This document shows, piece after piece, positions 6,200-50,870 of a DNA stretch of 64,000 bases (positions within the stretch are counted from its first letter, which is position 1; every line of letters begins with the position of its first letter). The stretch is taken from positions 124,001 through 188,000 of IMG/VR virus record IMGVR_UViG_3300030107_006644; one strand, given 5' to 3'. A model generated the notes under the pieces. It did no database searches. It was not told where the DNA came from and was given only the letters and a program-made list of their open reading frames with translations. The position numbers were made by a program, and so were the translations under genes.

Positions 6200-9100
6200 C
6201 AAAAGAACAGCATCGAAAATCAAATTTGTGGGGCTCCACGCTCATTCAGTAGCGGGCTCCATTTTCGACGCTTTAGGATATCCAGCCGATCATATGGACT
6301 TCGCCTATGAGAATGGCAACGATGCCCTAGCATTGACAGACCACGGCAACATGAACGGCTTGGCGTATCAAGTGCTACATGCCAAGAAGATGCAGGCTGA
6401 AGGAAAAGACTTCAAGCCAATTTACGGAGTGGAGGCGTACTTCATCCCTTCTCATGAAAAATGGCGTGAAGAATACGAAAAGGCAATGGAAGATAAGAAG
6501 CGCGCCCGGTCCATCGCAAAGGATTCAGCTTCCGGCGCGACGGTTGAAGACGAGGGAGCCAGCAAGAGATCTCAAGATATCCTTAAGGCCCGCCGCCATC
6601 TTGTCCTTTTGGCACAAAACGAAGTAGGTCTTAAGAATCTGTTCAAGCTTATTTCTGATAGTTACAGGTCCGAGAACTTTTATCGGTATCCGAGAGTTGA
6701 CTATGCCATGCTCAAGGAGCATAACGAGGGCATCATTGCCTCTTCGGCATGCTTGGGCGGCGTCTATGCAGGCAACTACTGGTCGGCGAGCACTTACGAT
6801 GAGGAGGGCAATCGCACAGGCTATGATGAGGAAATCGCCCTTGAGGCCATGCGCGAGACAACTCGCAACATGGTCGAGATCTTTGGAGATCGCTGGTACG
6901 CCGAAGTGCAGTGGAACAACATTCCACAACAGCATGAACTGAACCAACTTATCATTAAGGTCGCTGAGGAATTTGGAGTCGAACTTGTCTCTACTGCCGA
7001 CAGCCACTATCCGAATCCGACAGCGTGGAAGGACCGTGAACTTTACACGCGCTTGGGCTGGCTAGGCAAAGGAGGTTTGCCAGAATACATGTCGTCAGAC
7101 CTGCCAGATGGTGTGGAAGAGGTAGGGTATGAATTGTATCCGAAGAACGGAGACCAGATGTGGGCTTCCTACAAAAAGTACTCAGCCGAATGTGGGCATG
7201 AATACGATGATGATGCAGTCTTGCGCTCGATTACCAACACTCACCACATCGCGCACGAAAGAGTCGACTCTTTCTTCCCAGACAATACGGTCAGACTACC
7301 GGAGTTCGTTGTTCCTGCCGGCTTGACGGCCACACAGACCCTCGTTAAGCTGTCCATGGATGGTTTGGGTACCTTGGGGTTCGGAGACAACGAGGAGTAT
7401 ATAGAGCGCCTTAAGAGCGAATTAAAGGTTATTGATGATCGCGGGTTCTCCAAGTATTTCTTGACTATGAAGGCGGTATCCGACAAGGCCACTGATAGCA
7501 TGCTGGCCGGCCCCGGCAGAGGCTCAGCCGCCGGCTCGCTTGTGGCATATGCGCTCGGAGTTACACAGGTTGACCCGATTAAATACGGGCTTCTGTTTTC
7601 TAGGTTCTTGCGTTCGGATGCCACCGACTATCCCGATATTGATTACGATGTTGCGGATCCGATGGAGCTTAAAGAAAGGCTCATCGGAGAATGGGGAGAC
7701 GATACTGTTGTCCCTATTTCAAATTGGAACACACTGCAGCTTCGTTCTTTGGTCAAGGACATTTCCAAGTTTTACGAGATTCCCTTCCCAGAGGTAAACG
7801 CCGTTACCGGCAAGATGATTTGGGAAGCAACACCTGCAGCCAAGCAAAAGCACGGCATCAAAGCCGGCGTTTATGTGCCGACGTTTGAAGAGGTGAAAGA
7901 GTTCAGCCCATCTTTGCAGGCATTCTTGACCAAGTATCCGATGGTTGCTAACCATATCGATGTGCTTTACGGTCAGGTTCGCTCTTGTTCGCGTCATGCT
8001 GGAGGAGTTGTGATTGGGGAAAATCTCGATCACTATATGCCGCTCATCAACTCTGGTGGCGTGCGACAAACTCCTTGGAGCGAGGGTCAAAACGTGAGAC
8101 ATCTGGAGCCCATGGGGTTCATCAAGTTTGATATCTTGGGCTTGGCATCCTTAAGGATGATTGATGGAGCCATCCGGCACATCCTTCAGCGACACCAAGG
8201 TATTGAGCAGCCAACCTATGAAGACGTGAAGGCGTTCTATGATGGGAAGCTCCACCCAGATGTGCTAGACTTTGAAGACCAAGAAGTATATGAAAGTGTT
8301 TTCCACGCAGGCAAGTGGGCTGGAATCTTTCAGTTTACCGAGAAGGGAGCGCAGGAGTTTTGCACAAGGGCTAAGCCAACAAGTATTATTGATCTGTCTG
8401 CCATTACATCAATCTATCGTCCCGGCCCGCTTAGCGCCGACGTGGATGACAAGTATGTCGAGGCCAAGAACAGCCCTCAGTATATCAAGTACTTGCACCC
8501 TATTGTGCAGGAGGTTACGGAAGACACTTATGGATTCCTGATCTTCCAAGAGCAGATTGCAATCTTGGCGCATCGACTGGGGGAGGACTTGACTCTTGAC
8601 GAGGGCAACAAGCTTCGCAAGCTTCTGACCAAGAAGGGTACCGGAAAGGGTGCAACAGAAAAGAAGGTCATCTATGATAAGTTCATGAAGGGCTGCCTAA
8701 AGAAGAAGATTCACAGAGTGGATGCGCAAAACCTGTGGGATACATTTGAGTATTTTTCCGGTTATGGATTCAACAAGTCGCACGCTGTATCTTACAGTAT
8801 TCTTAGCTATCAGTGTGCGTGGCTTTGCCACTACTATACTCCGGAGTGGATCGCCTCGTTCTTAGATAAGGAGCCCGAGAAGAGAAAAGAGAAAGCCATC
8901 AACATCGCAAAGAGTTCAGGCTTTGCAATTCGCTCTTTGGATGTCAATACCTCTGGCCGCGTTTGGGAAATTAGCGAAGATGGTAACACGCTTGTTCAGC
9001 CGCTGACATCAATTAAAGGTTTGGGAGATACAGCGATTCAACAAATCGTTACAAATCGACCGTTCCAAACTGTGGAGGACTTCCTGTTTAATGAATCCAT

Positions 9101-9659
9101 CGTATACAGCAAGTTGAATAAGAAAGCTTTGGATGTCTTGATTCGAAGCGGCGCCATGGACACACTGATAGATGAGAGGTTCACCGGAGCAAAGCATTTC
9201 TGGTCAGCAGTTGCGGTTGATCGCCCTCGCAAGCCCAAGAACTTGCAGGAGAATATCGAGACTTATGCTCCCGAAGGAGACTTCTCGGAAGAGGACAAGA
9301 TCCAGTATCTCGTTGAGCTAACCGGCGTGTTCCCATTCAATCTGGTTATCGACGACAAGATTCGCCAGCGTTTGGAGAGTAAATTCATTCCGCCGATATC
9401 TGATTTCGATCCAGATCTACAACTGGCTTGGTTTATTCCCAGAAAGGTTACTCCTCGCAAAACCAAGAACGGCAAAGACTATTGGGTTGTCGAGGTCATC
9501 GATGATTCAAACAATTCGACAGTAATTCGATGTTGGGGTGTTCGACCAACACTCGATATGATACACATTAACAGGCCCTACATGGCTCGGCTAGATCATA
9601 ATGCCGAGTGGGGCTTTTCGACAAGATCTATTAGACATAATTTTAGGTTATTAGGATAA
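6192..9659 (+). CDS. dnaE: DNA polymerase III alpha subunit (family C) with PHP domain
   Basis: PHP motifs LHAHS, LTDHG, GVEAY, SACLGG, TADSHY; GPGRGSAAGSLVAY; catalytic PDIDYD and KFDILGL; YGFNKSHAVSY; no intein. Confidence 0.97.
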   Translation: MNNKRTASKIKFVGLHAHSVAGSIFDALGYPADHMDFAYENGNDALALTDHGNMNGLAYQVLHAKKMQAEGKDFKPIYGVEAYFIPSHEKWREEYEKAMEDKKRARSIAKDSASGATVEDEGASKRSQDILKARRHLVLLAQNEVGLKNLFKLISDSYRSENFYRYPRVDYAMLKEHNEGIIASSACLGGVYAGNYWSASTYDEEGNRTGYDEEIALEAMRETTRNMVEIFGDRWYAEVQWNNIPQQHELNQLIIKVAEEFGVELVSTADSHYPNPTAWKDRELYTRLGWLGKGGLPEYMSSDLPDGVEEVGYELYPKNGDQMWASYKKYSAECGHEYDDDAVLRSITNTHHIAHERVDSFFPDNTVRLPEFVVPAGLTATQTLVKLSMDGLGTLGFGDNEEYIERLKSELKVIDDRGFSKYFLTMKAVSDKATDSMLAGPGRGSAAGSLVAYALGVTQVDPIKYGLLFSRFLRSDATDYPDIDYDVADPMELKERLIGEWGDDTVVPISNWNTLQLRSLVKDISKFYEIPFPEVNAVTGKMIWEATPAAKQKHGIKAGVYVPTFEEVKEFSPSLQAFLTKYPMVANHIDVLYGQVRSCSRHAGGVVIGENLDHYMPLINSGGVRQTPWSEGQNVRHLEPMGFIKFDILGLASLRMIDGAIRHILQRHQGIEQPTYEDVKAFYDGKLHPDVLDFEDQEVYESVFHAGKWAGIFQFTEKGAQEFCTRAKPTSIIDLSAITSIYRPGPLSADVDDKYVEAKNSPQYIKYLHPIVQEVTEDTYGFLIFQEQIAILAHRLGEDLTLDEGNKLRKLLTKKGTGKGATEKKVIYDKFMKGCLKKKIHRVDAQNLWDTFEYFSGYGFNKSHAVSYSILSYQCAWLCHYYTPEWIASFLDKEPEKRKEKAINIAKSSGFAIRSLDVNTSGRVWEISEDGNTLVQPLTSIKGLGDTAIQQIVTNRPFQTVEDFLFNESIVYSKLNKKALDVLIRSGAMDTLIDERFTGAKHFWSAVAVDRPRKPKNLQENIETYAPEGDFSEEDKIQYLVELTGVFPFNLVIDDKIRQRLESKFIPPISDFDPDLQLAWFIPRKVTPRKTKNGKDYWVVEVIDDSNNSTVIRCWGVRPTLDMIHINRPYMARLDHNAEWGFSTRSIRHNFRLLG

Positions 9660-9669
9660 AGGAGGAAAT

Positions 9670-10604: not shown

Positions 10605-10885
10605 ATCGCAAACAACGCAGGGCTATGTCCAAGCTTCAAAAGAAGGGCAGCGACAAAGAAAAGGAAATGGCTCAGAAGGTTGCTCTCTTTGGCAAGTTGC
10701 CGGAAAGCTGCATGACGTGCAACAAGCCTTTTGACAAAGAAGACCGAGAGATGGTCATGGAGTGGAATGTAGTTGTGCGAAATGATAGAGAAAGTGTCAA
10801 CTTGTATTGCCCCACTTGTTGGGACAAGGCTAGACAGCTTATAGAAGAATTAAACCTTATGGAGAAGTCGAAAGATGAAGATTAG
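10601..10885 (+). CDS. Hypothetical protein with two CxxC motifs
   Basis: MNRKQRRA start; CMTC and CPTC; overlaps neighbours. Confidence 0.65.
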   Translation: MNRKQRRAMSKLQKKGSDKEKEMAQKVALFGKLPESCMTCNKPFDKEDREMVMEWNVVVRNDRESVNLYCPTCWDKARQLIEELNLMEKSKDED

Positions 10886-21681: not shown

Positions 21682-24600
21682 ATGAAGAAGATTTACGAGG
21701 GCTGGCGACGTTATGTTAAGAGAGTTCAACTCGATGAGTCTCGCAAAGTTAAACGTTCGCAGCTCCAAGAAAATTTAGAAACACTGAACGAGATTTCTCG
21801 CGAAGTCTCAGACAGAATATACAAATGGATGCGCGATGCATCGGTCATGGACTATTCGTTTGATGAATTGTTTGACGGTAAGATGCGCATGGCTATGCCG
21901 TTCGACTCTGAAGATGCGTTGAACCTTAAGAAGGTCGTCCGCGCACTCAAGAAAGACGGTTGGCAAGCCGGCGAAATGGTTCCGTGGGAAGGGGGCATGC
22001 ACAGCGCCAACAAGTTCCCCACGCGCACGGTCAAACAGAAGAGACAAAGACTTGCAGACGAGGGCGGCGGCTTTTACGAAGAAGAGATCGAGGTCGCGGA
22101 TCTGGGCCTTGCCAAGAGTTATGAAAAGGAAATACCCGCAGGCCCTCGCAAGGGAGAGATCATCCAGCGTACAGACAAGCTAGGAATGGGCAAAGCAATC
22201 GCCAAACTTGTTAAGGAGAAAAAGCTAGATAAAGAGTTGCTGGATTGGTGGCTTAAGAAACAAACTTATTATACAAAAGACAGGAACTGGACAGAGATCG
22301 AGGCATTGTTCGCCAACACTGAAGTGGATTATACTGTCATTATCTCGCGCCATCCAGTCGATGTACTCCGTATGAGTGATATTGGCAGCATCAGATCGTG
22401 CCACAGCGAGGGGCATAGTCACTTCCAATGCGCTGTGGCAGAAGCTAGGGGTCATGGACCCATCGCGTACCTTGTTCCGACGACAGAGTATGATAAACTC
22501 ATGGCCGGCTTGTATGAGGAATATGATACTGCTGATGATCCTGAGTCGGCATACGATGTGAATCGATCCACCAGCAAATTACTTAAAGCACACGCAGTGT
22601 TCAAAGCAGAAGAATATATCAAAAATCACATTACGACCATACACTCTCGCTGGTCATCGATATACAAAATAATTGACAATATCAAAACTAGCAAGGACGA
22701 GGATATGCTTGAATTCGCAATCCAAGCAGTCTTCGATGCCGACCCTGTGTATGGAGAACTAGACCCTACCGTTCGCGGCTTGCTAACTGATCAAGCTGTG
22801 ATGGACGCTGTGGTTGCCAAAGCCGAGGGCAAGGAATGGTCGCTCCGTCCAGACGACACGCAGGAAGACGAACCTGACGAACCTGAAGAAATCGGAGACA
22901 TATCCAAGTTTGATGATAAGGAAATCTTCAGAGACGGGCAGCGCGGAGTTAAAGGTATCGTTGCAAAGGGTCGCGTCAGGTTTAGAAAATTTGAAGATAG
23001 CGACTCGGATATGCAATTTATTGCCCCAGAGCACAGAACATATGGTGCAGTTCCTCCCGGCTTTGTCAAGTCGATGGTCAAGTGGGCCGCAGAGAGCCAA
23101 GAGCAGACGTTTAGAGACAACGGTTTTCTAGGCCGCCACCCAGAGCAGAGAGGCTTGCACGCCCCCAACTGGTACAGCCTGACTAGATATGGAGGATCGT
23201 ATGAGGACACAGAAGATGGGGATGTGCTGACGGCACTCTTTCAGCACTATGACTCGGAATTTAGTTCTTATAAGCTGGGTTGGAATGTCGATCATCACAC
23301 CGAAGATGAGCAGGACAGCCTCGCCGAACAATATGAGCAGAGAGTCGACGATCTTAATGATTACGCGGCCAACAATTTGGGGCACTGCAGCACCCACGCC
23401 GAGGTTAATGATGACGGTGAAGAGCCCTATGTCTATGCCAGCGGAGACTTGTCAATCGAATTAAACCTTCTAGGCTGGGGCGGCTTGATGGAAGACTATG
23501 TTGGCACAAACTACTATCAATCAAGAGGCGCCGATGAGGACGGCGACCCATATATTATTCCAAAGAGTTGGGGCGGTGATTATCAAAAGAGAAGACAATT
23601 TGAAAGAGCAATCGAAGACAAGCTGGACATCTACTCGGAAGAGACGGATTGGGAGGTTAATGTTCAAAAAGGTGGAGCAATAGGTGAAAAGGGCCCAACA
23701 ACAGTTTTAGAAGTGCGATTTAGATTTAGCATGGAAGATGGTCACACTCCTGATGACTACGAGAACTTTATTGATTATCTTAAGTCCGATGTCGATGACA
23801 AATATGAGAACATTCGCGAAGGAATAAGGTTAGCACTGGTTGAAGAAGGGTACATGCTCAGAAACTACTTCGACAAGCTTAATTATGCAGCGACAGAAGA
23901 TGACGAGGGAGAAGAGATCGAGCCCGGCCCTACTCCAGCGGAGGAATTTGCTGGAAGTCTTCAGCACTTCGAATTCTATCCTCCATCGGATGATGGCGAT
24001 GGCGAAATGTTGTTCGTGTCTCGCGGGCCCGGAAAGGTTAATTATATTACAACACCCACAATGATGCCCGCCTCGCTCCGAAAGCATGACAGAGCAACAG
24101 GCTGGACGGTGGCTGATCTTGAGACAGCGTTTGGTGGCGAACGGTTCTCACTTGGATTCGGCACACCGCCGTCAGTCAAACACACAGGCCTTGGCATGCA
24201 TAAGATAGCCATGGCCCTTAGCGACATACAAGAGGAAGCGGAAGCATATGCCGGCAGGCAATTGTCGCTTGACTTTGGGGAGAGATACGAGGCACCACCC
24301 GATCAGGATGTACTTCCAGACTTTGCAAAGAATGTGGAGTTCATAACCGTTCTTGCTACACCAACTGCTTCACAACAAGCGGGACTACCAGAGACAGGCG
24401 ATAAGGACTCTAGACATTTAGGTTTTGGGATCAGGGTTAAGATTCTTTCTGTTGATTCTGAACGCGAAATTAAAGGTGCAATTGCGTTTATGGAATATGT
24501 CGATAAGGAAATTAGGACAATTGCCAGAGCATTTCAAAGTCTATGGGAACCCGCAATTGAAGAGGCTGAAGAAACAAAAAAGAAGGCGCAAGCCGCAGCA

Positions 24601-31653: not shown

Positions 31654-32217
31654 ACCTTTGGAGACGGCCGAGATGACCGAAGAAGAAAAAAAATGCAGGC
31701 CACCATACCTTAAACTTGTTCACTCAAAGGCGTATGAGCCTCCGGCAGAACCTGAGAAAGTCGAAGAGATAGAGGTTATAGATTTTCACAAACCGTCTCG
31801 TGGTTTTCGCGACATGCTGAATCGAAAGGGCATAGATATGAAAACAATAACTATGGGCTTGGGTGCTATATGTATAATGTGTGCATCAATTGTGTTTATG
31901 ATGACCGTGCTATTGTTGGCTTCCTCTTCTTGACGATTTGCGATAGAGCGAACTATTTATATATTGTGAGGTGTAAGTTGTGGGATAGCTGTGCTAACAT
32001 TGTGTACTTCGGCTTTCGTTTGCTATGTGGCGGCGAGAATCAGGAAATCGTATATGTTGGCAGAGCAAAAAAAGAGACTGTTATCTGAGATGGAACAGAA
32101 GAGGCAACTCTTGGAGAGCTTGGAGAAACTTAAAGCTAAGGCAGCCCGCAGACGAAAAGCCAAAAAGAAAACTTAAAAACCACATCAACATAGTATATGA
32201 TATGAACTGGAGGACAA

Positions 32218-36666: not shown

Positions 36667-37296
36667 ATATGGGTAAGCAGGAGAAAGCAAACATGGAACT
36701 TGATACACCTTTTGATAATGCAGCTATCGCATGCGAATGCATTGTAACATCTGTCGCCTTTGCCTCGCAGGTAATCGAGGCGCAGAAGAAACTTCAACTA
36801 CAGCCAGAAGAAAATCGTGAAATGGTTTCTATTCTACTGGAAACCTATGCTATCGCATGGCTGGAAGCAGACGGAGCAGCGCAAGCCTGATGAAGACTGT
36901 AATCGTATTCGACACCGATGATGAAGAGGGCATGCGTAATGCCTTCAAGATCGTTGATCATCTTTCAATGCAGTATCTCAACCAACGCTTGCGTGCGATG
37001 ACTCCAACGGAGATTCGTTTCGGTCGGATCGAGTTTATAAAGATGATCCGTGCATATGCGAAACATATTACAGACGCTCAAAAGGCTGACGCCAAGGTAG
37101 ACATTAACAGTCTTAGATTCAACAAAGAGTATGCTGATAAGATTTGGCAGGAGAAACGCGCAAAGGCACTGATATGAAACACAACGAAGAACCAAAAACC
37201 GATCCACTATTCACTGCATACCTGTGTGTGTGCGTGTTCTGGATGCTCGCTGCTAGTGTCGCAGCGGCAAGTTAAACCTTCCGGCGGAGAAAACCA

Positions 37297-38851: not shown

Positions 38852-39090
38852 ATGTAACCATACTTCCCGGCGATCTGCTATGGCAGTTGCGACCTCCGCA
38901 CGGAGTCTGCCTATTGTTGGAGATAAAAGACCTTCCACAAGACGTTCGCTCAATGAAAGGCTGGATTTCTCAAGACTATCCAGTATACAGACTATTACAT
39001 CAAGCTGGGTTCATTTTTGAGGATCCCCATTACTATTACGAGAAGTTAAACCTTAGCCGACAGGAGAAACAAGATGGCAACTTGTATTAA
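38842..39090 (+). CDS. GDLV-like microprotein
   Basis: ILPGDLLW...YRLL. Confidence 0.5.
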   Translation: MQLNVTILPGDLLWQLRPPHGVCLLLEIKDLPQDVRSMKGWISQDYPVYRLLHQAGFIFEDPHYYYEKLNLSRQEKQDGNLY

Positions 39091-39516: not shown

Positions 39517-39882
39517 ATGGGCTATCGTTCAACAGCTATTCTCGCGGTCAGCAAAGAGGCTCGACCGTATCTTATGCACTTTCTCGGTAAAACACCGGCT
39601 GCTATGGAACTTTGTTTCGGACCACATGCGGATCGTACCGAAGACTTCCAAGGCGAAGAAGGGTCGGTCATGTTTCGTTTCGACAGCATTAAGTGGTACG
39701 AGGGCTATAAGGAGATCGACGCTATCGAGTCCTTCATGAGCCACATGGACTGCGACGAAGCAGAAGAACTGGGCGAGGGATGCGAGCATTATCGCTTTGT
39801 ACGTACTGGCGAAGAGTACGAGGATATTGAACAGCGTGGTTATGCCTTTGACATTCACCCGTCAGTCGGTATCGAGTATTAA
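39517..39882 (+). CDS. Phage hypothetical protein
   Basis: MGYRS start, IKWY, YRFVRTGEEYEDIE; GGAGG SD. Confidence 0.7.
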   Translation: MGYRSTAILAVSKEARPYLMHFLGKTPAAMELCFGPHADRTEDFQGEEGSVMFRFDSIKWYEGYKEIDAIESFMSHMDCDEAEELGEGCEHYRFVRTGEEYEDIEQRGYAFDIHPSVGIEY

Positions 39883-40100
39883 AGTTAAAGGTTGATAACA
39901 GGATCATAACATGAAGTATACAATACCGCAAGCAGGATCGATGATCGGCGCTCTCGCTACTGGTGAGAACATCAAAGGGATTCAGATCGTTGTCGAGTAC
40001 AAGTGTGACGCGAAAGGCGAGTGGATTCGATTCATTAAAGATCCACCAGATCATTGGTGGGATCTTAGCAATATAAACATTATTTCAAAGAAGGAACAGA

Positions 40101-41121: not shown

Positions 41122-41281
41122 AACTAACTCATGGGTGATGCAGCGGGACGACTATGCAAATCCCGGTGTGATCGTGGAAGACGTGTCTGGCGTGAGCACC
41201 CGACGCTACCGAGTCATGTGGGCCGATCAGAGAATCACGGTCGAACATGAAGGTTATCTTAAACCTTTGACATCTTCTTGA
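41093..41281 (+). CDS. GDLV-family microprotein
   Basis: MQVGDLVKF...PGVIV...YRVMW. Confidence 0.75.
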   Translation: MQVGDLVKFETNSWVMQRDDYANPGVIVEDVSGVSTRRYRVMWADQRITVEHEGYLKPLTSS

Positions 41282-42422: not shown

Positions 42423-42609
42423 ACCTTGGAAGGTGGGCGATCTAGTCAGGATTAAACGCACTGGTGAGACTGCGTTGATATTGTACGTTGCCGATGCGTC
42501 CATCGGCTGCAAAATGATTAAGATTCATACGGGCGAGTATTTCGCCCCTTGGAAGTTAAACCTTGTTAGCAAGGGAGCTAACAAGGTCGAAGAAGGGAGA
42601 GAGGAATGA
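42409..42609 (+). CDS. GDLV-family microprotein
   Basis: WKVGDLVRIKRTGETALIL...KLNLVSK. Confidence 0.7.
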   Translation: MQDPRPWKVGDLVRIKRTGETALILYVADASIGCKMIKIHTGEYFAPWKLNLVSKGANKVEEGREE

Positions 42610-42959
42610 TGCCGATTTGGGTTTTTATGGTTCGCTACGATGGCGAAATGGCTTGCAGTACGCACTTGACGGAGAAGGGCGCGATCCTGACCGCGATTGA
42701 AGACGTGCTGCAGTACCTTGGAGTAGAAGACGAAGAGGACGCGAAGAACATATTTAGCGAACCGAGAAGATACAGTAATGTTTCCGCAGTCGAAGCAGCA
42801 CTGAAAGAAGACGAGGTTCAACCTCCCGAATGGGATATTGGAAAGATGCAGAAGATGAATCGTGAACAACTTTATCGAGTCTATGCCGGATGGTGCGAGA
42901 AGACGTGGGATCACCACATCTACGAGTGCGAGATCATGAAAACGACGGTGACCGGATGA
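42606..42959 (+). CDS. Hypothetical protein
   Basis: Coupled to both neighbours. Confidence 0.6.
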   Translation: MMPIWVFMVRYDGEMACSTHLTEKGAILTAIEDVLQYLGVEDEEDAKNIFSEPRRYSNVSAVEAALKEDEVQPPEWDIGKMQKMNREQLYRVYAGWCEKTWDHHIYECEIMKTTVTG

Positions 42960-43279
42960 AGTTAAACCTTGAAGCTGCACCCGTCGAGGTTGTCTGGCCG
43001 CCGTGTCTCTCGACTATCGGAGGCAAGCGATATGCGATCAGCGGCAACGTCTGGATCGAAGTACCGATGTCCACCGTGTTCGACGATTTGCCTCGATATA
43101 TGGTCTGTGAGGCCCGCAAAGCCCCTGTGACGGCTCCGTGTCAGTCATGGGAGGTACAGGGTAGCAAAGGCAACAAGTACGCTGTGAGGCTGTCTGAGGG
43201 TGTCTGGTCCTGCTCATGTCCCGGCTACTCGTTCCGTCGCAAATGTCGCCATATTGAGGAAAAGAAGATTGAAGTTTAA
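42956..43279 (+). CDS. SWIM zinc-finger protein
   Basis: VQGSKGNKYAV...WSCSCPGYSFRRKCRHI (CxC...CxH). Confidence 0.8.
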   Translation: MKLNLEAAPVEVVWPPCLSTIGGKRYAISGNVWIEVPMSTVFDDLPRYMVCEARKAPVTAPCQSWEVQGSKGNKYAVRLSEGVWSCSCPGYSFRRKCRHIEEKKIEV

Positions 43280-44578: not shown

Positions 44579-44745
44579 GTGCGGCCCCACCACATATATA
44601 ACTAAAGGTGGGATTCAATGCCTTGAGTGAATCCACTGCGCTCCACCAGTCCCTTTGCGGGATGAGGACGTGAACCCGAGAGGGAGTCGAAACAAGGCTG
44701 GCGAGGAAGACGCGGTAAGGACAGCGATCATCGGTGGGGCCGCAC
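44579..44745 (+). ncRNA. Candidate structured non-coding RNA (~167 nt); strand assumed from flanking genes
   Basis: Perfect 13-bp closing stem GTGCGGCCCCACC/GGTGGGGCCGCAC; internal stems GGATTCA/TGAATCC, CTGCG/CGCGG, CCAG/CTGG, GAC/GTC; CCC-GAGA-GGG GNRA hairpin; intergenic. Confidence 0.6.
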
Positions 44746-44783
44746 CCCCTTCAACTTAAACCTTTGAACTTTTGAGAAAACAC

Positions 44784-45182: not shown

Positions 45183-45194
45183 ATCAAACCTCTC

Positions 45195-45249
45195 TTGACA
45201 TTCTCTTTACAACTTTAACCTTGACTTCCTCACTCATATCGGCTATATT
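45195..45249 (+). promoter_or_regulatory. Triple-TTGAC early promoter, copy 9
   Basis: TTGACA(45195), TTTACA(45206), TTGACT(45221)-17 bp-TATATT(45244). Confidence 0.85.
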
Positions 45250-45294: not shown

Positions 45295-46077
45295 ATGGGT
45301 AACTATTCTGGAACTATTCGATGCGGTCACTGTTACGAGCGAGGCCACAATCGGGCTGGCTGCGAGAAGCTGACCGAGCAACTTGCTACACAATGGAGTC
45401 GCATCGAGACTGCGGGGTATGATGATGACAACTATACTCATAAGCGCACCCGTCAAATGCTAGCCAAGCGTCAGGGGTCTGACCCTCTCACTGGTGAGAG
45501 CACCCGCAAGCGTCGGGCGACCTACGGAGGCCGCAAGTGCTCATACTGCGGCGAGCCGGGTCACACTCGTCGCACTTGTCCGTCGATGAAGACTGACAAA
45601 CAGAACTATCGCACGTTGACTGCAGCATCGCGCTCGACCCTCATTGAACGCATGCGCGAGCATGGTTTCGGACCCGGCTCGCTCTTGACTACCGTGTCAA
45701 AGGATTGGGAGGATGGCGAGTACAAGACCCGCACGGTCCCGATGATTGTCAAGTCCGTGGACTGGGAAGCGATCCACCAACGGACATGGGGCAGTCAGGG
45801 TCAGGGTGGCCCCGAATGTGTCACAGTGCTCCGCATGAATGATAGCCGCATCGTTCAGATTATGCTTCCTAACTGCGTTACAGGCTACGATCCTAGCTGG
45901 AATCGCGTTGAGCTTGCTGGTCGAGTAGAGGACGTGCAGCCTCCCGCTGGATGGCTCGATGCATCGGAACTCGACTCCAAGACCATGGGCCAAGTGGTCG
46001 AACTCTTTGAAACTGGGGTTGCCCGCGACTACTACTGGTGGCAGCGACAGCCCGAAATAGAAGGACAGGAAGGTTAA
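45295..46077 (+). CDS. Protein with two CCHC zinc knuckles
   Basis: CGHCYERGHNRAGC and CSYCGEPGHTRRTC, both exact CX2CX4HX4C. Confidence 0.8.
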   Translation: MGNYSGTIRCGHCYERGHNRAGCEKLTEQLATQWSRIETAGYDDDNYTHKRTRQMLAKRQGSDPLTGESTRKRRATYGGRKCSYCGEPGHTRRTCPSMKTDKQNYRTLTAASRSTLIERMREHGFGPGSLLTTVSKDWEDGEYKTRTVPMIVKSVDWEAIHQRTWGSQGQGGPECVTVLRMNDSRIVQIMLPNCVTGYDPSWNRVELAGRVEDVQPPAGWLDASELDSKTMGQVVELFETGVARDYYWWQRQPEIEGQEG

Positions 46078-46084
46078 ACCTTTC

Positions 46085-46168: not shown

Positions 46169-46729
46169 ATGACTGACACGCCGACCACTTCTGACCTTCG
46201 CGCCCTCAAGCTGACCGAGGACGAATGGCACTCACTCATGCACATGGGTGAGTTTGATCCTATTCGCGCTCACATGGATATGCTTGTGCTGGCTGGGCTT
46301 GCCGTGCGAACGCACATTCACCCGCCCGAATGGGATCTGACCGAGGCCGGTCACGCAGCCTGCAACGCGATTGATCTCATCCTCGACTGGGATGACTTTG
46401 TATTCGTAGGCGACGGAGAGGACACCGAGCCTTTCGGCGTTATTCAGCTTGAGAACGCTTCTGATGCCTCTGATACGGTCTTCCTGAATGGTGAGCCTAT
46501 CGAGCGCAGCGAAGCCGTAGAACTGGCTTCTGAGGCCCCTAAGCGCATCGGCGTAGGATCGCTTGTGCGCCACCAGCACCACGGCGAAGGTCTAGTGACC
46601 GATCATTTCATGTGGGATGGCGACTGGGGCGGCTTCAGGATTAAACTTCTTAAACCTTCCCAAACTGGCGCTACAACCTCGATTACCGAGTTTAGTGACC
46701 GCGCCGATTCCTTTGAACTTGTAAGTTAA
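46169..46729 (+). CDS. Hypothetical protein: wHTH-like N-terminus and SH3-like C-terminus
   Basis: LVLAGLA...WDLTEAG; IGVGSLVRHQHHGEGLV...FELVS. Confidence 0.6.
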   Translation: MTDTPTTSDLRALKLTEDEWHSLMHMGEFDPIRAHMDMLVLAGLAVRTHIHPPEWDLTEAGHAACNAIDLILDWDDFVFVGDGEDTEPFGVIQLENASDASDTVFLNGEPIERSEAVELASEAPKRIGVGSLVRHQHHGEGLVTDHFMWDGDWGGFRIKLLKPSQTGATTSITEFSDRADSFELVS

Positions 46730-46736
46730 ACCTCTC

Positions 46737-46791: not shown

Positions 46792-46840
46792 TATAATGTG
46801 AGCGAGGGATGAACCCTCGCCTTGACCTAGGAGTCCTATC

Positions 46841-47908
46841 ATGGCTGTCGATTTCGCCACTTTCCGTTCTGTCGTTCCTCATGTCACTGCTGCCCGCTTC
46901 CCCGTGCTCTTGCGCGGTCGTCACGGTGTCGGTAAATCACAGGTTGTTTATCAGCTTGCAGGCGATCTCGATCTCCCCGTTGTGGAGCGTCGAGCTTCGC
47001 AAATGACCGAGGGCGATCTTCTCGGCCTTCCGTCTACCGATGGCGCGACCACCCGATGGAACCCGCCTGTCTGGTTTAAGACCGCGTGCGAGACTCCTGT
47101 TGTGCTCTTTCTGGATGAGGTTGACCGTGCGACGGTCGAGGTCCGTCAGGGCATTTTCGAGTTGACCGATAGCCGCAAGCTGGCTGGGTTCTCGCTCCAT
47201 GAGGACACGATCATCATCGCAGCCGTCAACGGTGGCGAACATGGCGCTCAATATCAGGTCGGCGAAATGGACCCGGCAGAGCTTGACCGCTACACGGTCT
47301 TCGACGTTGAGCCTTCCCATGAGGATTGGCTTGAGTGGGCGAAGTCTAACGTCGATGGCGTCGTTTGGGACTTCATCAACAACAATCGGAACCACCTTGA
47401 GCACGCTGGCGACTTTGAGCCGAACAAGGTTTACCCTTCCCGTCGTTCGTGGGATCGGCTCAATCAGGCTGCGACTGGTGCGGCTCTCTTTGAAGAGGGT
47501 GCCGATCTCGGTCTGCTCTACAACCTGACTTGCGCGTTTGTCGGCTTTGAAGCTGGCGTTGCGTTCAAGGACTTCGTTGAGAACTATTCCCGTCAGGTCA
47601 CTGTCGAGGATATTTTGGTCAAGGGTGAGATTGACCGTACCTCCGAGTTCACGATCAACGAGCACAGTGCTTTGGTCGAAAAGATGGAGGCAACCGAGAC
47701 TTTCGCGGATCACCTGCCTTCCGAGCAGATTCAGAACCTCGCTGATTTCTTCGTCACGCTGCCTTCTGAAGTTGCTATGAAGCTGTGGACCGTCATGGGT
47801 AACGGCGAGATCCAGAACACTGTCGATCTCCACCAGTCCACTGCGTCCGATGGTCGCTCCGTGTCTGGATACCTCGTTGAGCTTCTGACCGGCGAGGCAG
47901 CAAGTTAA
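46841..47908 (+). CDS. MoxR-like AAA+ ATPase
   Basis: Walker A GRHGVGKS, GDLLGLP, Walker B LFLDEVDRA, MDPAELDRY, PSRRSW. Confidence 0.9.
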   Translation: MAVDFATFRSVVPHVTAARFPVLLRGRHGVGKSQVVYQLAGDLDLPVVERRASQMTEGDLLGLPSTDGATTRWNPPVWFKTACETPVVLFLDEVDRATVEVRQGIFELTDSRKLAGFSLHEDTIIIAAVNGGEHGAQYQVGEMDPAELDRYTVFDVEPSHEDWLEWAKSNVDGVVWDFINNNRNHLEHAGDFEPNKVYPSRRSWDRLNQAATGAALFEEGADLGLLYNLTCAFVGFEAGVAFKDFVENYSRQVTVEDILVKGEIDRTSEFTINEHSALVEKMEATETFADHLPSEQIQNLADFFVTLPSEVAMKLWTVMGNGEIQNTVDLHQSTASDGRSVSGYLVELLTGEAAS

Positions 47909-47917
47909 ACCTTGAAC

Positions 47918-47938
47918 GTCCCCCGCTTGTCGGGGGAC
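47918..47938 (+). terminator. GC-rich hairpin after the ATPase gene (possible terminator)
   Basis: GTCCCCCG-cttgt-CGGGGGAC, flanked on both sides by TTAAACCTT. Confidence 0.5.
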
Positions 47939-47949
47939 TTAAACCTTTC

Positions 47950-48004
47950 TTGACATTCTCTTGACAACTTTGCCCTTGATTTTTTCGCTCCAGCGTGCTA
48001 TATT
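47950..48004 (+). promoter_or_regulatory. Triple-TTGAC early promoter, copy 12
   Basis: TTGACA(47950), TTGACA(47961), TTGATT(47976)-17 bp-TATATT(47999). Confidence 0.85.
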
Positions 48005-48027
48005 ATATGTGTAGTAAGGAGATTTCT

Positions 48028-49224: not shown

Positions 49225-49357
49225 ACAACACAACTTAAACCTTTGGAGGGTTTTGTGATTACTACTGCAGCAGCTATTTTGTTTTGTTCTCTTTGGGTCG
49301 CCGCCTTTTCGGTGCTTGGCTATGAAGCATGCGCCCCGCTCATTCGTGGGGTGTAAC

Positions 49358-49678
49358 ATGGCTATTTTCTCAAGAGACACGCGAGGAACCAATCAGACCG
49401 TTATTCAAGAGTGGTCCGAGGGTAGAAGTGCCAGAAATCATAAAGGTACACTGACCACAAACGGTATCTATCTTTACAGTTACACAGTGGTTATTGGTAT
49501 CAGGCTTGAGTCCGGTGTAACAATCGTCAAGGACTGCACTGCGCCCGCTGGCATGTTCCATTCTATGACCACTTCACAGCATGTAGGCGCAGCAAAGCGA
49601 GTAGCTAACACTGTCATGCATCCAAGGGTCTGGGAAGCAACGCCCGAACTGCATGAGTTCTCCGATGTGCCATTTTAA
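49358..49678 (+). CDS. Phage hypothetical protein
   Basis: LYSYTVVIG...SMTTSQHV. Confidence 0.65.
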   Translation: MAIFSRDTRGTNQTVIQEWSEGRSARNHKGTLTTNGIYLYSYTVVIGIRLESGVTIVKDCTAPAGMFHSMTTSQHVGAAKRVANTVMHPRVWEATPELHEFSDVPF

Positions 49679-49693
49679 GGGTCGAGGGTAATA

Positions 49694-50014
49694 ATGAAGT
49701 ATTATTTAACGAAAACAGACGTTAGACGCGGGGATCCTCAAAAGGGTGAACCCGCTATTGTTGCGACAGAAGTTGTGATGACCAAGCCAGCAACGTACAA
49801 GGCGACAGAAGGAGCACGCCAACGCTGGACCGCTATGGGTATTGAAAACCTGCATGTCATTGAACACAAAGCCAAGCGATACAACAGTTTGGTGAGGGAA
49901 CAGAATAAAAGACGCAAAGCAGAGAAGAAGATGACCAAGGCAGACTTGGCCGAGATTGCTGCAGCGTTCGCAGACAATGACGAGGAGAATAAGGAAGAGG
50001 GTAGTAATGATTAA
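49694..50014 (+). CDS. Hypothetical protein
   Basis: ORF with GAGG SD. Confidence 0.6.
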   Translation: MKYYLTKTDVRRGDPQKGEPAIVATEVVMTKPATYKATEGARQRWTAMGIENLHVIEHKAKRYNSLVREQNKRRKAEKKMTKADLAEIAAAFADNDEENKEEGSND

Positions 50015-50129
50015 AAAGATTATTGCTGCATTGATTGTGATACTTCTATGGGAGAATAGACACACTATTGCAGAACACATTAAGGTATTCTGGTATGAAG
50101 GTGTTACCATTTCCCAGAACGGTTAGGAG

Positions 50130-50870
50130 GGATCAGGCCCGTGGAGTTTCATCGGGTTAGGACAAAGCAAGTTAAACCTTTCTATAAAGTGAGCGAAGAG
50201 GTAACAAAATGAGGGGATGATCTAGTATATACACGATGCACCACTGTGTCAACGTGTCAAAACATATACGGTTAGCTGGGGAAGCGTATCAAAAGGTATA
50301 CGCTGCTCAAGTTAAACCTTTGTCACATAAATGTCACACAAGGCATGCTACAAGTGCGACAAGGGTGGACATGACAAGGCCGAGGGCCGAGGAGAATATA
50401 AATGTATCAGCGTAACAACAATGATGCTACAAATGCGACAGACGAGAGCGCAGGTTATAACGACCATATCAGTGACGCACTAGCATGTGTCTTTATGTGT
50501 ATCATTGTATACATCATGTGCTACATAGGGTTTGCTCTTGACGTTGCAGGAGGATACGAAAGATGAGCGAGGGTAATAAAATAAATAATGATACACAATA
50601 ATACATACAACACATGTAACACAGGTGATACAAGCAACACATAAAGGGACACAAGCATAAGGTAGGTGTAACCTATGTAACCAGTGACACATATAAAGCG
50701 TATACATTTATATATGCTACACAAAAGCATAGTAATAACAAGCACATACACTACCCCCCCTCCCCTCTCCCGGAATGTAAGTACCTGTAATCATTGGGGT
50801 TTCAAGCGACGACTAGATCAACGTGTGATCGCTATGAAAAAAACGTAGATCTTCATTTTTCAGAAAATAT
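50130..50870. other. Long non-coding, strand-skewed region (candidate origin or terminus)
   Basis: No credible ORF; A/C-rich low-complexity tract ~50570-50750; C tract 50754-50771; two GTTAAACCTT sites; reversed TGACA repeats. Confidence 0.5.
50224..50260 (-). promoter_or_regulatory. Minus-strand sigma70 promoter with doubled TTGACA
   Basis: Reverse complement reads TTGACA-cg-TTGACA-17 bp-TATACT. Confidence 0.6.

What the first reader, a model, noticed from the sequence alone, without database searches (positions are those of the whole stretch)
7422..50320. Over-represented, strand-polarised 9-mer TTAAA(CC/GG)TT concentrated in the early region
Seen: TTAAACCTT at ~10850, 23461, 31650, 37272, 39046, 41259, 42556, 42962, 44756, 46074, 46650, 47905, 47939, 49235, 50172 and 50312, usually preceded by AAG or AAC. 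TTAAAGGTT occurs at ~7422, 9013, 26746, 33822, 39885, 40332, 43335 and 45070. A given 9-mer of this composition is expected less than once in 64 kb (rough estimate). Copies fall in different reading frames (KLNL, VKP, LKP) and between genes, so the signal is in the nucleic acid. Several abut stop codons, hairpins or the triple-TTGAC promoters. Both variants fit the quasi-palindrome TTAAA-SS-TTTAA. Inference: a protein-binding or processing site, such as a repressor or nucleoid site, a Chi/KOPS-like polar signal or an mRNA cleavage site.
Basis: partly seen in the sequence, partly recalled or inferred. Interest (0 to 1): 0.7.

Follow-up and report, generated by a model that had tools for sequence, protein, structure and literature searches.

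The report
Gene-start signal in phage early region
An uncultured 205-kb marine phage repeats a 12-13-base one-directional signal (AAGTTAAACCTTt) just before genes, promoters and, in close relatives, stable-RNA genes of its early region; it is a real, selected regulatory element, most likely a phage-specific promoter class, but its reader and exact function are not established.

Summary
The CC word is real. TTAAACCTT occurs 17+/0- in the window (0.45 expected) and 19+/1- in the 205.5-kb genome. It is the core of a 12-13-nt block, c-AAG-TTAAACCTT-t (8 exact 12-mers against about 0.01 expected).

15 of 19 copies lie outside deep coding sequence and 14 of 19 lie within 9% of the genome (each P about 2e-11).

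The GG word is mostly ordinary coding sequence. It shows the same codon-context excess as TTAAAGCTT and TTAAACGTT. Strand polarity is uninformative because 212 of 214 genes are on the + strand.

The block has no -35 or -10 partner. Its 3' edge abuts whatever starts next: SD and start codon, the first TTGAC box of sigma70-type early promoters, a tRNA cluster (L093, L094) or a covarying structured RNA.

Related uncultured phages carry lineage-specific versions (ATAAACCTT, GTAAACTT, CAAACCTT, GTTAAACTT) in the same region. The variant is imposed even on an orthologous coding site. Nine other complete relatives lack the element.

Chi/KOPS, sigma70, MotA-type and T7-type readings are rejected.

Best guess (about 0.4): a single-block promoter for host RNA polymerase reprogrammed by an unidentified phage factor. 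Rivals: a stoperator-like roadblock, or an RNA processing or operator site. Transcript 5'-end mapping would decide.

The parts
31647..31659 (+). Motif copy AAGTTAAACCTTt. Its TAA is the stop codon of the conserved 344-aa gene. GGAG starts 1 nt after the motif and the ATG lies 15 nt after it. It marks the left edge of the early region.
37269..37281 (+). Motif copy AAGTTAAACCTTc, preceded by a hairpin without a U tract, 16 nt upstream of the ATG of a 45-aa arginine-rich ORF (37297-37431).
39043..39055 (+). Motif copy AAGTTAAACCTTa, 20 nt upstream of the ATG of a 65-aa zinc-finger-like protein. Homology with L093 begins exactly at the motif.
39882..39893 (+). GG variant AAGTTAAAGGTT in a typical boundary context (3 nt after a stop codon, 18 nt before an ATG). 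It is the only GG copy that looks like a member.
41256..41267 (+). Motif copy ATCTTAAACCTT. Its last T overlaps the first TTGAC box of a sigma70-type promoter array. It is orthologous to L093 3556.
42553..42564 (+). Motif copy AAGTTAAACCTT inside the 3' end of a 66-aa gene (W-K-L-N-L), followed directly by a hairpin and then an SD. The orthologous L093 site reads AAAATAAACCTT (W-K-I-N-L).
42959..42970 (+). Motif copy AAGTTAAACCTT forming codons 2-5 (K-L-N-L) of a SWIM zinc-finger gene (42956-43276). In L093 and L094 the same gene follows a motif copy at a different genomic position.
44753..44765 (+). Motif copy AACTTAAACCTTt, 6 nt after the closing stem of the structured RNA and 20 nt before the ATG of gene 44784-45182. 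The unit 44734-45186 is absent from L093, L094 and a population variant in run X3.
45211..45222 (+). Degenerate copy AACTTTAACCTT overlapping the -35 box (TTGACT) of a sigma70-type promoter.
46071..46083 (+). Motif copy AGGTTAAACCTTt. Its TAA is the stop of the 260-aa zinc-knuckle gene. The first TTGAC box of a triple-TTGAC promoter lies 2 nt downstream.
46647..46658 (+). Copy TTCTTAAACCTT inside gene 46169-46729, 71 nt before its stop. Membership is uncertain.
46723..46734 (+). One-mismatch copy AAGTTAAACCTC. Its TAA is the stop of gene 46169-46729. A triple-TTGAC promoter starts 2 nt downstream.
47902..47913 (+). Motif copy AAGTTAAACCTT. Its TAA is the stop of the AAA-ATPase gene, and a hairpin follows. 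In L093 and L094 the orthologous copy precedes a tRNA-Leu/Lys/Met cluster by 0 and 8 nt.
47936..47948 (+). Motif copy GACTTAAACCTTt directly after the hairpin, 2 nt upstream of a TTGAC promoter array for the VWA/metallopeptidase gene.
49232..49244 (+). Motif copy AACTTAAACCTTt, 11 nt after the VWA gene stop. GGAGG starts 1 nt after the motif and a GTG lies 11 nt after it (33-aa hydrophobic ORF). Relatives carry their own variant at this junction (L093, L094, L114, L124, L147).
50169..50181 (+). Motif copy AAGTTAAACCTTt in a long, largely non-coding stretch, with no clear downstream gene.
50309..50321 (+). Motif copy AAGTTAAACCTTt after a hairpin, followed by the direct repeat TGTCACA x2, 82 nt upstream of a 54-aa ORF.
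10847..10858 (+). Outlying copy GAATTAAACCTT in the last 35 nt of a 94-aa gene, 17 nt upstream of the start of a 349-aa gene.
23461..23469 (+). Deep-coding copy (E-L-N-L in the 1742-aa gene). Probably background from codon-context bias and not a functional member.
55147..55155 (+). Probably background.
44583..44750 (+). Associated feature: a structured non-coding RNA candidate of about 170 nt. It is bracketed by the motif: a 5' copy in L093 and L094 that is degenerate here, and a 3' copy here.

Best explanation
The block c-AAG-TTAAACCTT-t is a selected cis-acting signal that marks the 5' boundary of expression units in the phage's early region. The units are a gene with its SD, an early promoter plus gene, a tRNA cluster, or a structured RNA. 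A trans-acting factor whose specificity differs between phage lineages reads it.

I hold that general claim at about 0.9.

The specific mechanism I rank first, at about 0.4, is a compact single-block promoter of a second (middle-type) temporal class. In this model host RNA polymerase, reprogrammed by a still unidentified phage-encoded factor, initiates at or just past the 3' edge of the block. Selected early-region genes, tRNAs and the small RNA would then stay expressed independently of, or after, the sigma70-type early promoters.

Shown:
- the element's existence, extent and position;
- its lineage-specific variants and its restriction to one clade.

Inferred:
- that it is a promoter;
- where transcription would start;
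For: 1. Enrichment and position. 8 exact 12-mers on +. 15 of 19 copies are outside deep coding sequence and 14 of 19 lie in 9% of the genome, each P about 2e-11.

2. Three classes of boundary word. Words enriched at gene boundaries in this genome fall into exactly three classes: sigma70-type early, ACTATTTAT late-type, and this motif. It therefore behaves like a third promoter class sharing the early region.

3. Coupling to the downstream unit.
- SD-like sequence from +1, and start codons at 11-42 nt.
- First TTGAC box at +2 in six sites.
- tRNA-Leu at 0 nt (L093) and 8 nt (L094).
- Outer stem of the structured RNA at 2-4 nt.
- Distance to the upstream stop ranges from -79 to +186 nt.

4. Lineage variants. 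The 5' half is lineage-specific (AAGTT, AAATA, AAAGT, AAACA, GCGTT) and the 3' half is constant (AAAC(C)TTT). The change is concerted within a genome, even at an orthologous coding site. From my own knowledge, the promoters of T7, T3 and SP6 polymerases vary in the same way.

5. Host-RNAP programme. The phage runs a T4-style programme with many TTGACA/TATATT promoters, a gp55-like late sigma and a sigma-region-4-like partner. A further temporal class is therefore plausible. In T4, middle promoters also lie in early regions, upstream of early promoters and tRNA genes (established knowledge of T4 transcription).
Against: - No reader was found. There is no T7-type RNAP, no MotA or AsiA, and no second sigma.
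- No -10 or -35 partner and no purine-rich start position appear in 71 pooled sites.
- In about 6% of sites the SD begins 1-2 nt after the block, and in L093 tRNA-Leu begins at 0 nt. The start site would therefore have to lie at the very edge of the block.
- Copy 42959 lies inside codons 2-5 of a gene.
- Genome copy 90308 fires straight into an intrinsic terminator.
- Two copies flank a 25-nt hairpin (47902 and 47936).
- No RNA data exist for this phage.
- Nine complete relatives lack the element altogether, so it is not essential to the family's programme.
Confidence: 0.4

Rival explanations
1. RNA-level signal. Either a 'punctuation' cleavage site at which a sequence-specific endoribonuclease cuts polycistronic early transcripts into mRNAs, tRNAs and the structured RNA, or an operator on the mRNA for a translational repressor (RegA-like).
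For: - The motif brackets the tRNA cluster precisely in L093: it ends at 11077, the tRNAs span 11078-11321, and the next copy starts at 11324.
- It brackets the covarying structured RNA.
- It lies 1-20 nt upstream of SDs.
- Most units have no intrinsic terminator between them, so read-through transcripts must exist.
- All copies are in the transcribed sense.
- An RNase H-like (PF04308) protein is encoded at 56683-57150 and is shared with the CCTT-type relatives.
Against: - The motif is no more single-stranded in predicted transcripts than same-composition control words (0.51 against 0.53, P 0.74), and it has no consistent flanking structure.
- From my own knowledge, a 13-nt unstructured recognition site with lineage-specific variants is unusual for known bacterial or phage endoribonucleases.
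- Cleavage at 42959 would destroy the mRNA of the gene it lies in.
- Copies directly upstream of promoters lie 80-110 nt from the next start codon, too far for a translational operator.
- No nuclease or RNA-binding reader has been linked to it.
Confidence: 0.25
2. DNA site for a phage-encoded protein that blocks or insulates transcription, stoperator-like. The bound factor would stop read-through from the upstream unit into the next gene or promoter, giving conditional control of early operons.
For: - A 12-13-bp asymmetric site, about 17 copies, in short intergenic spaces and overlapping stop or start codons, all oriented with transcription, with lineage-specific variants. These are the features listed for Cluster A stoperators (PMC6550527, read).
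- It occupies the slot between gene end and early promoter that a terminator stem-loop fills in T4-type PeSLs (PMC4122927).
- At the three triple-TTGAC promoters without it, the upstream TGA stop lies inside the first TTGACA box, leaving no room.
- This reading tolerates every odd position (inside a gene start, before a terminator, flanking a hairpin).
Against: - No binder was identified. The 544-aa double-HTH protein is unique to this phage. The 186-aa neighbour is strongly acidic, net charge -23.
- Copies are clustered in one region and are not spread over the genome as stoperators are.
- A block placed 0-8 nt before tRNA and RNA genes would prevent their synthesis.
- The site lies upstream of early promoters at about -68 and does not overlap them, so it could not shut them off.
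- No sign of a temperate lifestyle was seen (not searched exhaustively).
Confidence: 0.2
3. A passive by-product with no regulatory role: a short junction sequence spread and homogenised by recombination or duplication of gene cassettes in a hyperplastic region (PeSL-like shuffling).
For: - The early region is a shuffled mosaic relative to L093, L094 and L095.
- The cassette 44734-45186 is bracketed by motif copies and is absent from relatives and from a population variant.
- The SWIM gene travels with its 5' motif copy.
- Three motif-plus-promoter units are clearly duplicates.
Against: - Synteny breakpoints are just as common at gene boundaries without the motif (22 of 25) as with it (9 of 12).
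- The flanks of the exact 12-mers are unrelated, so the copies are not remnants of a longer repeat.
- The lineage-specific variant is imposed on an orthologous coding site at the cost of an amino-acid change.
Confidence: 0.05
4. Translational enhancer upstream of the SD, like the epsilon element of the T7 gene 10 leader or an S1-binding sequence.
For: - The variant GTTAAACTTT (L114, L124, L147) differs by one base from the T7 gene 10 epsilon sequence TTAACTTTA (recalled from my own knowledge, not tested).
- Many copies sit 1-20 nt upstream of an SD.
Against: - It does not explain copies directly before tRNAs, the structured RNA, promoter arrays or hairpins.
- It does not explain strict 12-mer conservation with lineage-specific variants.
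Confidence: 0.05

Closest known systems
Stoperators of Cluster A mycobacteriophages (L5 gp71 type repressor sites)
   Same: A 12-14 bp asymmetric site with tens of copies, lying in short intergenic spaces or overlapping stop and start codons, all oriented with transcription. The motif sequence differs between lineages (PMC6550527).
   Different: Here the copies are confined to one 19-kb region and are not spread genome-wide. No repressor or binder was found. The phage shows no sign of lysogeny. The copies abut the 5' ends of tRNA and RNA genes, which a roadblock would silence.
Start-associated sequences (SAS) of Cluster K mycobacteriophages
   Same: An asymmetric motif of about 13 bp in one orientation, restricted to the non-structural part of the genome, just upstream of gene starts. 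The stop codon of the upstream gene is sometimes inside it. Function is unknown (PMC3203893).
   Different: A SAS contains the Shine-Dalgarno sequence and sits 3-7 bp from the start codon. This motif lacks an SD, lies 11-42 nt from starts with a separate SD in between, and also precedes promoters, tRNAs and a structured RNA.
Phage-specific single-block promoters (T4 late TATAAATA read by gp55; T7/T3/SP6 polymerase promoters)
   Same: One short conserved block without a -35 partner, tied to one temporal gene class. The 5' half is lineage-specific and the 3' half is constant. The block is placed directly upstream of the transcribed unit.
   Different: No cognate polymerase or sigma was identified. 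The family's gp55-like sigma most likely reads the separate, family-wide ACTATTTAT word. The SD or a tRNA can start 0-2 nt after the block, closer than a T4-type -10 element allows.
PeSLs / PmSLs of T4-type phages (promoter-early or promoter-middle stem-loop cassettes)
   Same: Repeated regulatory cassettes at the borders of variable small ORFs in a hyperplastic early region. The arrangements hairpin-motif-promoter (47920-48004) and motif-promoter resemble them (PMC4122927).
   Different: A PeSL is a composite of 50 bp or more made of a stem-loop and a sigma70 promoter. This element is a 13-nt unstructured block that also occurs without a promoter or hairpin. Its copies are no more associated with synteny breaks than other gene boundaries.

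Membership tests
Sigma70-type promoter | -35 (TTGACA) and -10 (TATAAT) hexamers about 17 bp apart | tested here: not met
   Pooled alignment of 71 sites shows no conserved partner from -22 to +45 and no TAnnnT at a fixed offset. The genuine sigma70-type promoters of the region are separate elements.
T4 middle (MotA-dependent) promoter | MotA box at -30 plus a sigma70 -10 element 11-13 bp downstream | tested here: not met
   No -10-like element lies downstream. Start codons lie 11-42 nt after the motif, which would be upstream of such a start site.
T4 middle (MotA-dependent) promoter | Phage encodes MotA and AsiA | tested here: not met
   PF09158 (MotCF) and PF09010 (AsiA): no match at E <= 1 in six frames of the genome. 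Divergent analogues cannot be excluded.
T4-type late promoter (gp55-dependent) | A single -10-like block upstream of late (structural) genes, with a gp55-type sigma encoded | tested here: not met
   A gp55-like protein exists (phrog_234). However, late genes are preceded by a different, family-wide word, ACTATTTAT, 16-31 nt before the ATG. The motif is confined to the early region.
T7-type single-subunit RNAP promoter | Phage encodes a T7-like RNA polymerase | tested here: not met
   PF00940: no match at E <= 1, although none of the control genomes rang either. Catalytic motifs A, B and C are absent in six frames.
T7-type single-subunit RNAP promoter | Conserved block reaching the start site, with a lineage-specific upstream half | tested here: inconclusive
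   The pattern of a variable 5' half and a constant 3' half is present. The start site is unknown.
Stoperator (Cluster A mycobacteriophage) | 13-14 bp asymmetric site, many copies, oriented with transcription, mostly outside promoters | tested here: met
   12-13 nt block, about 17 boundary copies, all on the transcribed strand's sense, none inside a promoter core. Orientation is uninformative here because nearly all genes are on +.
Stoperator (Cluster A mycobacteriophage) | Sites distributed across the genome | tested here: not met
   14 of 19 copies lie in 9% of the genome.
Stoperator (Cluster A mycobacteriophage) | A cognate monomeric repressor that binds the site and co-varies with it | tested here: inconclusive
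   Two candidates were rejected: the 544-aa HTH protein is unique to this phage, and the 186-aa protein is acidic. The protein-DNA complex job was not folded. No binder is known.
Start-associated sequence (Cluster K) | Contains the SD and lies 3-7 bp upstream of the start codon | tested here: not met
   The motif has no SD. A separate SD follows at +1 to +20 and starts lie at 11-42 nt. Copies also precede tRNAs and promoters.
PeSL (T4-type mobile regulatory cassette) | Composite of a stem-loop and an early promoter, preferentially at indel or replacement borders | tested here: not met
   The element is an unstructured 13-mer. Breakpoints against L093's genome are as frequent at boundaries without the motif (22 of 25) as with it (9 of 12).
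Chi / KOPS-like polar genome signal | Dispersed along the chromosome with strand skew tied to replication, independent of gene boundaries | tested here: not met
   Clustered and boundary-bound. The skew is explained by gene orientation.
Intrinsic terminator | G+C-rich hairpin followed directly by a U tract | tested here: not met
   The motif is unstructured. Hairpins occur upstream of only about 6 of 15 copies and lack U tracts.

The most novel reading that the evidence does not exclude
The motif is an RNA 'punctuation' signal. A phage-encoded, sequence-specific endoribonuclease, or a guide-dependent host nuclease, would cut long early transcripts at a 13-nt unstructured site. This would release individual mRNAs, a tRNA cluster and a novel structured RNA, and the site and nuclease specificity would co-evolve between phage lineages. 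That would be a previously undescribed mode of phage transcript processing, with a programmable-looking recognition sequence.
Probability: 0.15. Interest if true: 0.75.

Novelty: new member of a known kind. Interest (0 to 1): 0.5.

Why it matters
The phage belongs to a large, cosmopolitan and entirely uncultured family of marine phages of about 200 kb. More than 200 related IMG/VR contigs were found, and no cultured relative exceeds about 31% polymerase identity.

Defining its regulatory vocabulary gives a first map of its expression programme: sigma70-type early promoters, a family-wide late word, and this clade-specific third signal.

If the motif is a promoter, an unknown factor that retargets host RNA polymerase awaits discovery. 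If it is a roadblock or an RNA cut site, it extends those rare mechanisms to a new phage group.

In all cases it marks gene-unit starts, which helps annotate small ORFs and non-coding RNAs in these genomes.

Tried and rejected
- **Chi/KOPS or other replication-linked skew.** Rejected: clustered, boundary-bound, and polarity is trivial.
- **GG word as the same element.** Rejected: mostly deep coding, and the same shuffle excess is seen for TTAAAGCTT and TTAAACGTT.
- **AAGTCGGTGAT as the relatives' counterpart motif.** Rejected: it is the 5' coding end (MKVGDLV) of an amplified small-gene family.
- **Sigma70, MotA/AsiA, sigma28, sigmaE or ECF -35 readings.** No partner element; no MotA or AsiA.
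- **T7-type RNAP.** None found. The giant ORFs look structural or gave no hits.
- **RNA accessibility or flanking structure.** No difference from controls.
- **Motif as a recombination junction.** No specific association with synteny breaks.
- **Integron attC-like core** (GTTAAAC fits GTTRRRY). Rejected: no inverse core or palindrome, and the variant ATAAACC does not fit.
- **544-aa double-HTH protein as reader.** It is unique to this phage.
- **186-aa protein 46169-46729 as reader.**
  - It co-occurs with the element in 6 of 8 loci that carry it.
  - Its model shows a helical-plus-hairpin N-domain and a Tudor-like C-domain.
  - Rejected because the N-domain is strongly acidic and its putative recognition helix is hydrophobic.
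- **Protein-DNA complex prediction.** The tool did not fold it, so it gives no evidence.
- **Population microdiversity over the sites.** The output was truncated to 40 of 627 differences. None of those shown falls in a motif, but this is not a test.
- **RNA runs.** None holds this phage, and contigs of distant relatives say nothing about transcript ends.
- **Literature search by sequence.** Only primer hits.
- **Phyletic profiling.** 18 proteins are restricted to the CCTT-type genomes, but this is confounded with phylogeny.

Full report
**What the window is.** The window is bases 124001-188000 of a 205,517-bp IMG/VR virus record rated complete.
- It is a myovirus. It encodes tail sheath, baseplate wedge, portal and major head proteins, a DnaE-type polymerase, RNR and GroEL, and a T4 gp55-like late sigma (phrog_234, genome 12220-12984).
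- A 79-aa ORF at window 12237-12476 carries a sigma-region-4-like domain.
- No GenBank phage is close. There is no megablast hit and polymerase identity is at most 31%.
- IMG/VR holds more than 200 related contigs from marine samples, several of 185-204 kb.
- My own gene caller places 212 of 214 genes on the + strand, with 94% of the genome coding.

**The assembly gap.** The gap at 12785-12794 lies inside one gene for an acidic low-complexity protein. In L009, L087 and L013 one frame spans both flanks. Here the flanks are in different frames, so the 10-N length is nominal and the two ORFs (12554-12784 and 12796-13401) are probably one gene. No motif copy lies within 1 kb of the gap, so it does not affect the finding.

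**Checking the observation.** All listed coordinates are right.
- TTAAACCTT occurs 17 + / 0 - in the window (0.45 expected) and 19 + / 1 - in the genome, where it is the commonest + strand 9-mer.
- Aligning the copies gives one block, c-A-A-G-TTAAACCTT-t, with unrelated flanks. The exact 12-mer AAGTTAAACCTT occurs 8 times on +, never on -, all between window 31647 and 50320.
- 15 of 19 copies lie outside deep coding sequence (P 1.8e-11) and 14 of 19 lie in window 31.6-50.4 kb (P 2.1e-11).
In-CDS counts of all four TTAAA-SS-TT words exceed a synonymous-codon shuffle: CC 8 against 1.2, GG 8 against 1.5, GC 12 against 1.7, CG 4 against 0.6.
- The GC, CG and most GG copies are ordinary coding sequence in two frames, far from gene ends: (I/F/V)-K-A-x, L-K-L, L-K-V, x-K-G. 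This general excess is codon-context bias.
- The four deep-coding CC copies fit that background. The roughly 15 boundary copies are the real signal. Of the GG copies only 39885 has a boundary context.
- Strand polarity says nothing on its own, given the gene orientation.

**Anatomy.** The region 31.6-51 kb is the early region. It holds about 60 small ORFs and about 14 strong sigma70-type promoters on the + strand. Seven of those are 'triple TTGAC' arrays with an extended -10, TGcTATATTAT. The motif occurs in four recurrent contexts:
- Overlapping or just after the upstream stop codon. The motif's TAA is the stop codon at 31650, 46074, 46726 and 47905.
- 11-42 nt upstream of a start codon with an SD in between (10850, 31650, 37272, 39046, 39885, 42556, 44756, 49235).
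- 0-3 nt upstream of the first TTGAC box (41259, 46074, 46726, 47939). At the three arrays without the motif, the upstream TGA stop lies inside the first TTGACA, leaving no room.
- Next to hairpins that lack U tracts. At 47902-47947 two copies flank a 25-nt hairpin.

Two further points follow. Distances to the downstream feature are tight, while distances to the upstream stop range from -79 to +186 nt. Copy 42959 forms codons 2-5 of a SWIM zinc-finger gene.

**Relatives.** The exact word is not enriched in relatives at about 70% polymerase identity. The closest ones carry the core in the same region:

| Source | Motif variant | Copies |
|---|---|---|
| L093 | (A/T)TAAACCTT | 9/0 |
| L094 | (A/T)TAAACCTT | 5/0 |
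| L095 | (A/T)TAAACCTT | 5/2 |
| G010 / L099 | (A)AAGTAAACTT | 12 in its last 17 kb |
| L134, L137, L145 | AACAAACCTT | 5-7 each |
| L114, L124, L147 | (C)GTTAAACTT | 4-7 each |

- Several sites are orthologous. One example is the junction after the VWA gene. Another is 42556 = L093 6546, where the T-to-A switch turns W-K-L-N-L into W-K-I-N-L.
- Pooling 71 sites from 12 genomes gives a single block from -13 to +1, s-A-A-n-w-T-w-A-A-m-C-T-T-t. The 5' half is variable and the 3' half is constant. Information content is below 0.2 bit everywhere else. SD-like sequence starts from +1, and the first TTGAC is at +2 in six sites.
- In L093 the motif ends at 11077, a tRNA-Leu/Lys/Met cluster spans 11078-11321, and the next copy starts at 11324. 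In L094 the spacing to tRNA-Leu is 8 nt.
- In L093 and L094 the motif also ends 2-4 nt before the outer stem of a conserved structured RNA.
- De novo analysis of words enriched at gene boundaries in 13 complete or near-complete genomes finds the early and late classes in all of them. It finds a sharp third class only here, a weaker one in G010, and nothing in nine others. The element is therefore a derived, clade-restricted feature, most expanded in this phage.

**Tests of mechanism.**
- *Promoter.* There is no partner element, no T7-type polymerase, and no MotA or AsiA. The family-wide ACTATTTAT word lies 16-31 nt before the ATGs of structural genes and fits the gp55-like sigma. A promoter reading therefore needs a single block with the start site at its 3' edge and an unknown factor.
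- *RNA site.* Predicted accessibility of the motif equals that of same-composition control words (0.51 against 0.53, P 0.74).
- *Recombination junction.* Many homology blocks with L093 begin or end at copies. A motif-bracketed cassette (44734-45186) is missing in L093, L094 and a variant in run X3. However, boundaries without the motif are breakpoints just as often, 22 of 25 against 9 of 12.
- *Reader, 544-aa candidate.* The 544-aa double-HTH protein and the neighbouring 1049-aa ORF are unique to this phage.
- *Reader, 186-aa candidate.* The 186-aa protein at 46169-46729 is restricted to the CCTT genomes. Homologues of its N-domain occur in 8 of 80 loci, and 6 of those carry the element. Its model (pLDDT 71) has a helical-plus-hairpin N-domain and a confident beta-barrel. 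The barrel matches the PcrA/UvrD Tudor domain (5dma, TM 0.76 over the target), Mfd and Spt5 KOW. The protein has net charge -23 and a hydrophobic invariant 'recognition' helix, so I reject it as a nucleic-acid reader.
- *Direct tests that gave nothing.* The protein-DNA complex job was not folded. No RNA run holds the phage, and contigs of distant relatives are uninformative.

**Interpretation.** The element is real, selected at the nucleotide level, and read by something whose specificity differs between lineages. It marks the start of expression units in the early region. I hold this general statement at about 0.9. My ranking of mechanisms is below.

| Mechanism | Probability |
|---|---|
| Single-block, phage-specific (middle-type) promoter | about 0.4 |
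| RNA processing site or RNA operator | about 0.25 |
| Stoperator-like DNA roadblock or insulator | about 0.2 |
| Passive recombination scar | about 0.05 |
| Translational enhancer | about 0.05 |

Reasons for putting the promoter first:
- It behaves as a third boundary-word class alongside the early and late classes.
- It is tightly coupled to downstream units, including tRNA and RNA genes.
- Its pattern of a variable 5' half and a constant 3' half resembles phage polymerase promoters.
- From my own knowledge, most polar intergenic phage motifs of this kind have turned out to be promoters.

The weak points are the missing reader, the very short distance to some SDs and to tRNA-Leu, and a few copies in positions that make no sense for a promoter.

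**Comparison with known systems.** The closest analogues are the following:
- Cluster A stoperators share size, asymmetry, copy number, intergenic position and lineage variation. They differ in genome-wide spread and in having a known repressor.
- Cluster K start-associated sequences share restriction to the non-structural half and a position just before starts. They differ in containing the SD.
- T4-type PeSL/PmSL cassettes share the hyperplastic-region context. They differ in being composites of a stem-loop and a promoter.
- T4 late and T7-group promoters share the single-block, lineage-specific design.

The element fails at least one defining feature of each family (see the membership table). 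I file it as a new member of the general kind 'short, oriented, lineage-specific regulatory motif of a phage temporal gene class', not as a member of any one named family.

**Verdict.** Observation: partly confirmed. The CC word is confirmed. The GG word and the significance of polarity are not. Novelty: new member of a known kind, in an uncultured phage family without any experimental data. Interest: 0.5.

Noticed in passing
window 44583-44750 (+); L093 8262-8437; L094 2459-2625: A structured non-coding RNA candidate of about 170 nt lies between gene 43772-44575 and the motif at 44753. The outer stem covaries completely among three genomes and the internal core is nearly invariant. 47 pairs are predicted, 12 with compensatory changes. 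There is no Rfam match, so it may be a new phage RNA family.
   Followed up: partly
whole genome, e.g. window 12505, 21647, 31952, 58043, 63914; genome 66386, 78400, 90365, 90662, 98980, 193564: The word (A)ACTATTTAT is strongly polarised (about 24 + / 3 -) and lies 16-31 nt upstream of the ATGs of structural genes. It is conserved in all relatives examined; G006 and G001 also use ACTAATTAT. It is probably the late promoter read by the gp55-like sigma (genome 12220-12984).
   Followed up: partly
window 12237-12476 (+): A 79-aa ORF matches Sigma70 region 4 above Pfam's cut-off (E 2.4e-6) and is conserved across the family. Together with the gp55-like (sigma-region-2-type) protein it suggests a T4-like split late sigma (gp55/gp33 analogy).
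   Followed up: no
window 36070-36124, 36612-36666, 39268-39322, 41267-41320, 46085-46139, 46737-46797, 47950-48004: Seven 'triple TTGAC' promoters of the form TTGACA-N5-TTGACA-N9/10-TTGAC-N17-(TG)nTATATTAT. The two extra upstream TTGACA boxes are unexplained. They could be extra RNAP or regulator sites, or tandem promoters.
   Followed up: partly
window 37739, 38141, 40796, 40947, 41888, 42254; L119 (23 copies), L130, L168 and others: A tandemly amplified family of small genes begins ...GGAGGTGATCA-ATG-AAA-GTC-GGT-GAT-TTG (MKVGDLV...), translationally coupled. There are 6 copies here and up to 23 in 19 kb of relatives. One early-region protein gives a weak KOW-domain hit; I did not identify which one.
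   Followed up: partly
window 46169-46729 (+): A very acidic (net charge -23) early protein of 186 aa. Its confident C-terminal beta-barrel resembles the RNA-polymerase-docking Tudor domains of PcrA/UvrD and Mfd. It has 66 unannotated homologues in marine metagenomes. It may be a host-RNAP-binding or DNA-mimic protein.
   Followed up: partly
window 50127-50973: About 850 nt are almost non-coding and rich in ACA-type short repeats (TGTCACA x2, GTGTCAA x2, runs of ACACA/ATACA). The stretch ends at a sigma70-type promoter for the 544-aa double-HTH gene. It could be an origin, an iteron or operator field, or the border of an inserted element.
   Followed up: no
window 50974-52608 and 53502-56651: A 544-aa protein with two HTH_17/MerR-type domains and a 1049-aa ORF without any family match are both absent from all 12 compared relatives. 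They look like a lineage-specific insertion.
   Followed up: partly
window 56683-57150 (+): A 156-aa protein of the RNaseH_like family PF04308 (YkuK type; E 2e-25). It is present in G006 and G001 and absent from G010 and G003.
   Followed up: no
window 37297-37431 (+): An unannotated 45-aa arginine- and lysine-rich ORF (MAKKKIKTIKPRNWLALHARRRRGG...) lies directly behind a motif copy. Part of it is conserved at the DNA level in L093 and L099.
   Followed up: no
window 12785-12794: The assembly gap lies inside the gene for an acidic low-complexity protein. The reading frame differs across the gap here but is continuous in three relatives, so the gap length is wrong by a non-multiple of three.
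   Followed up: yes
window 42000-50000: G+C is 53-54% and GC skew is near 0, against 45-48% and +0.1 to +0.17 elsewhere. The genes there (AAA ATPase, VWA/metallopeptidase) are nevertheless conserved core genes of the family.
   Followed up: partly
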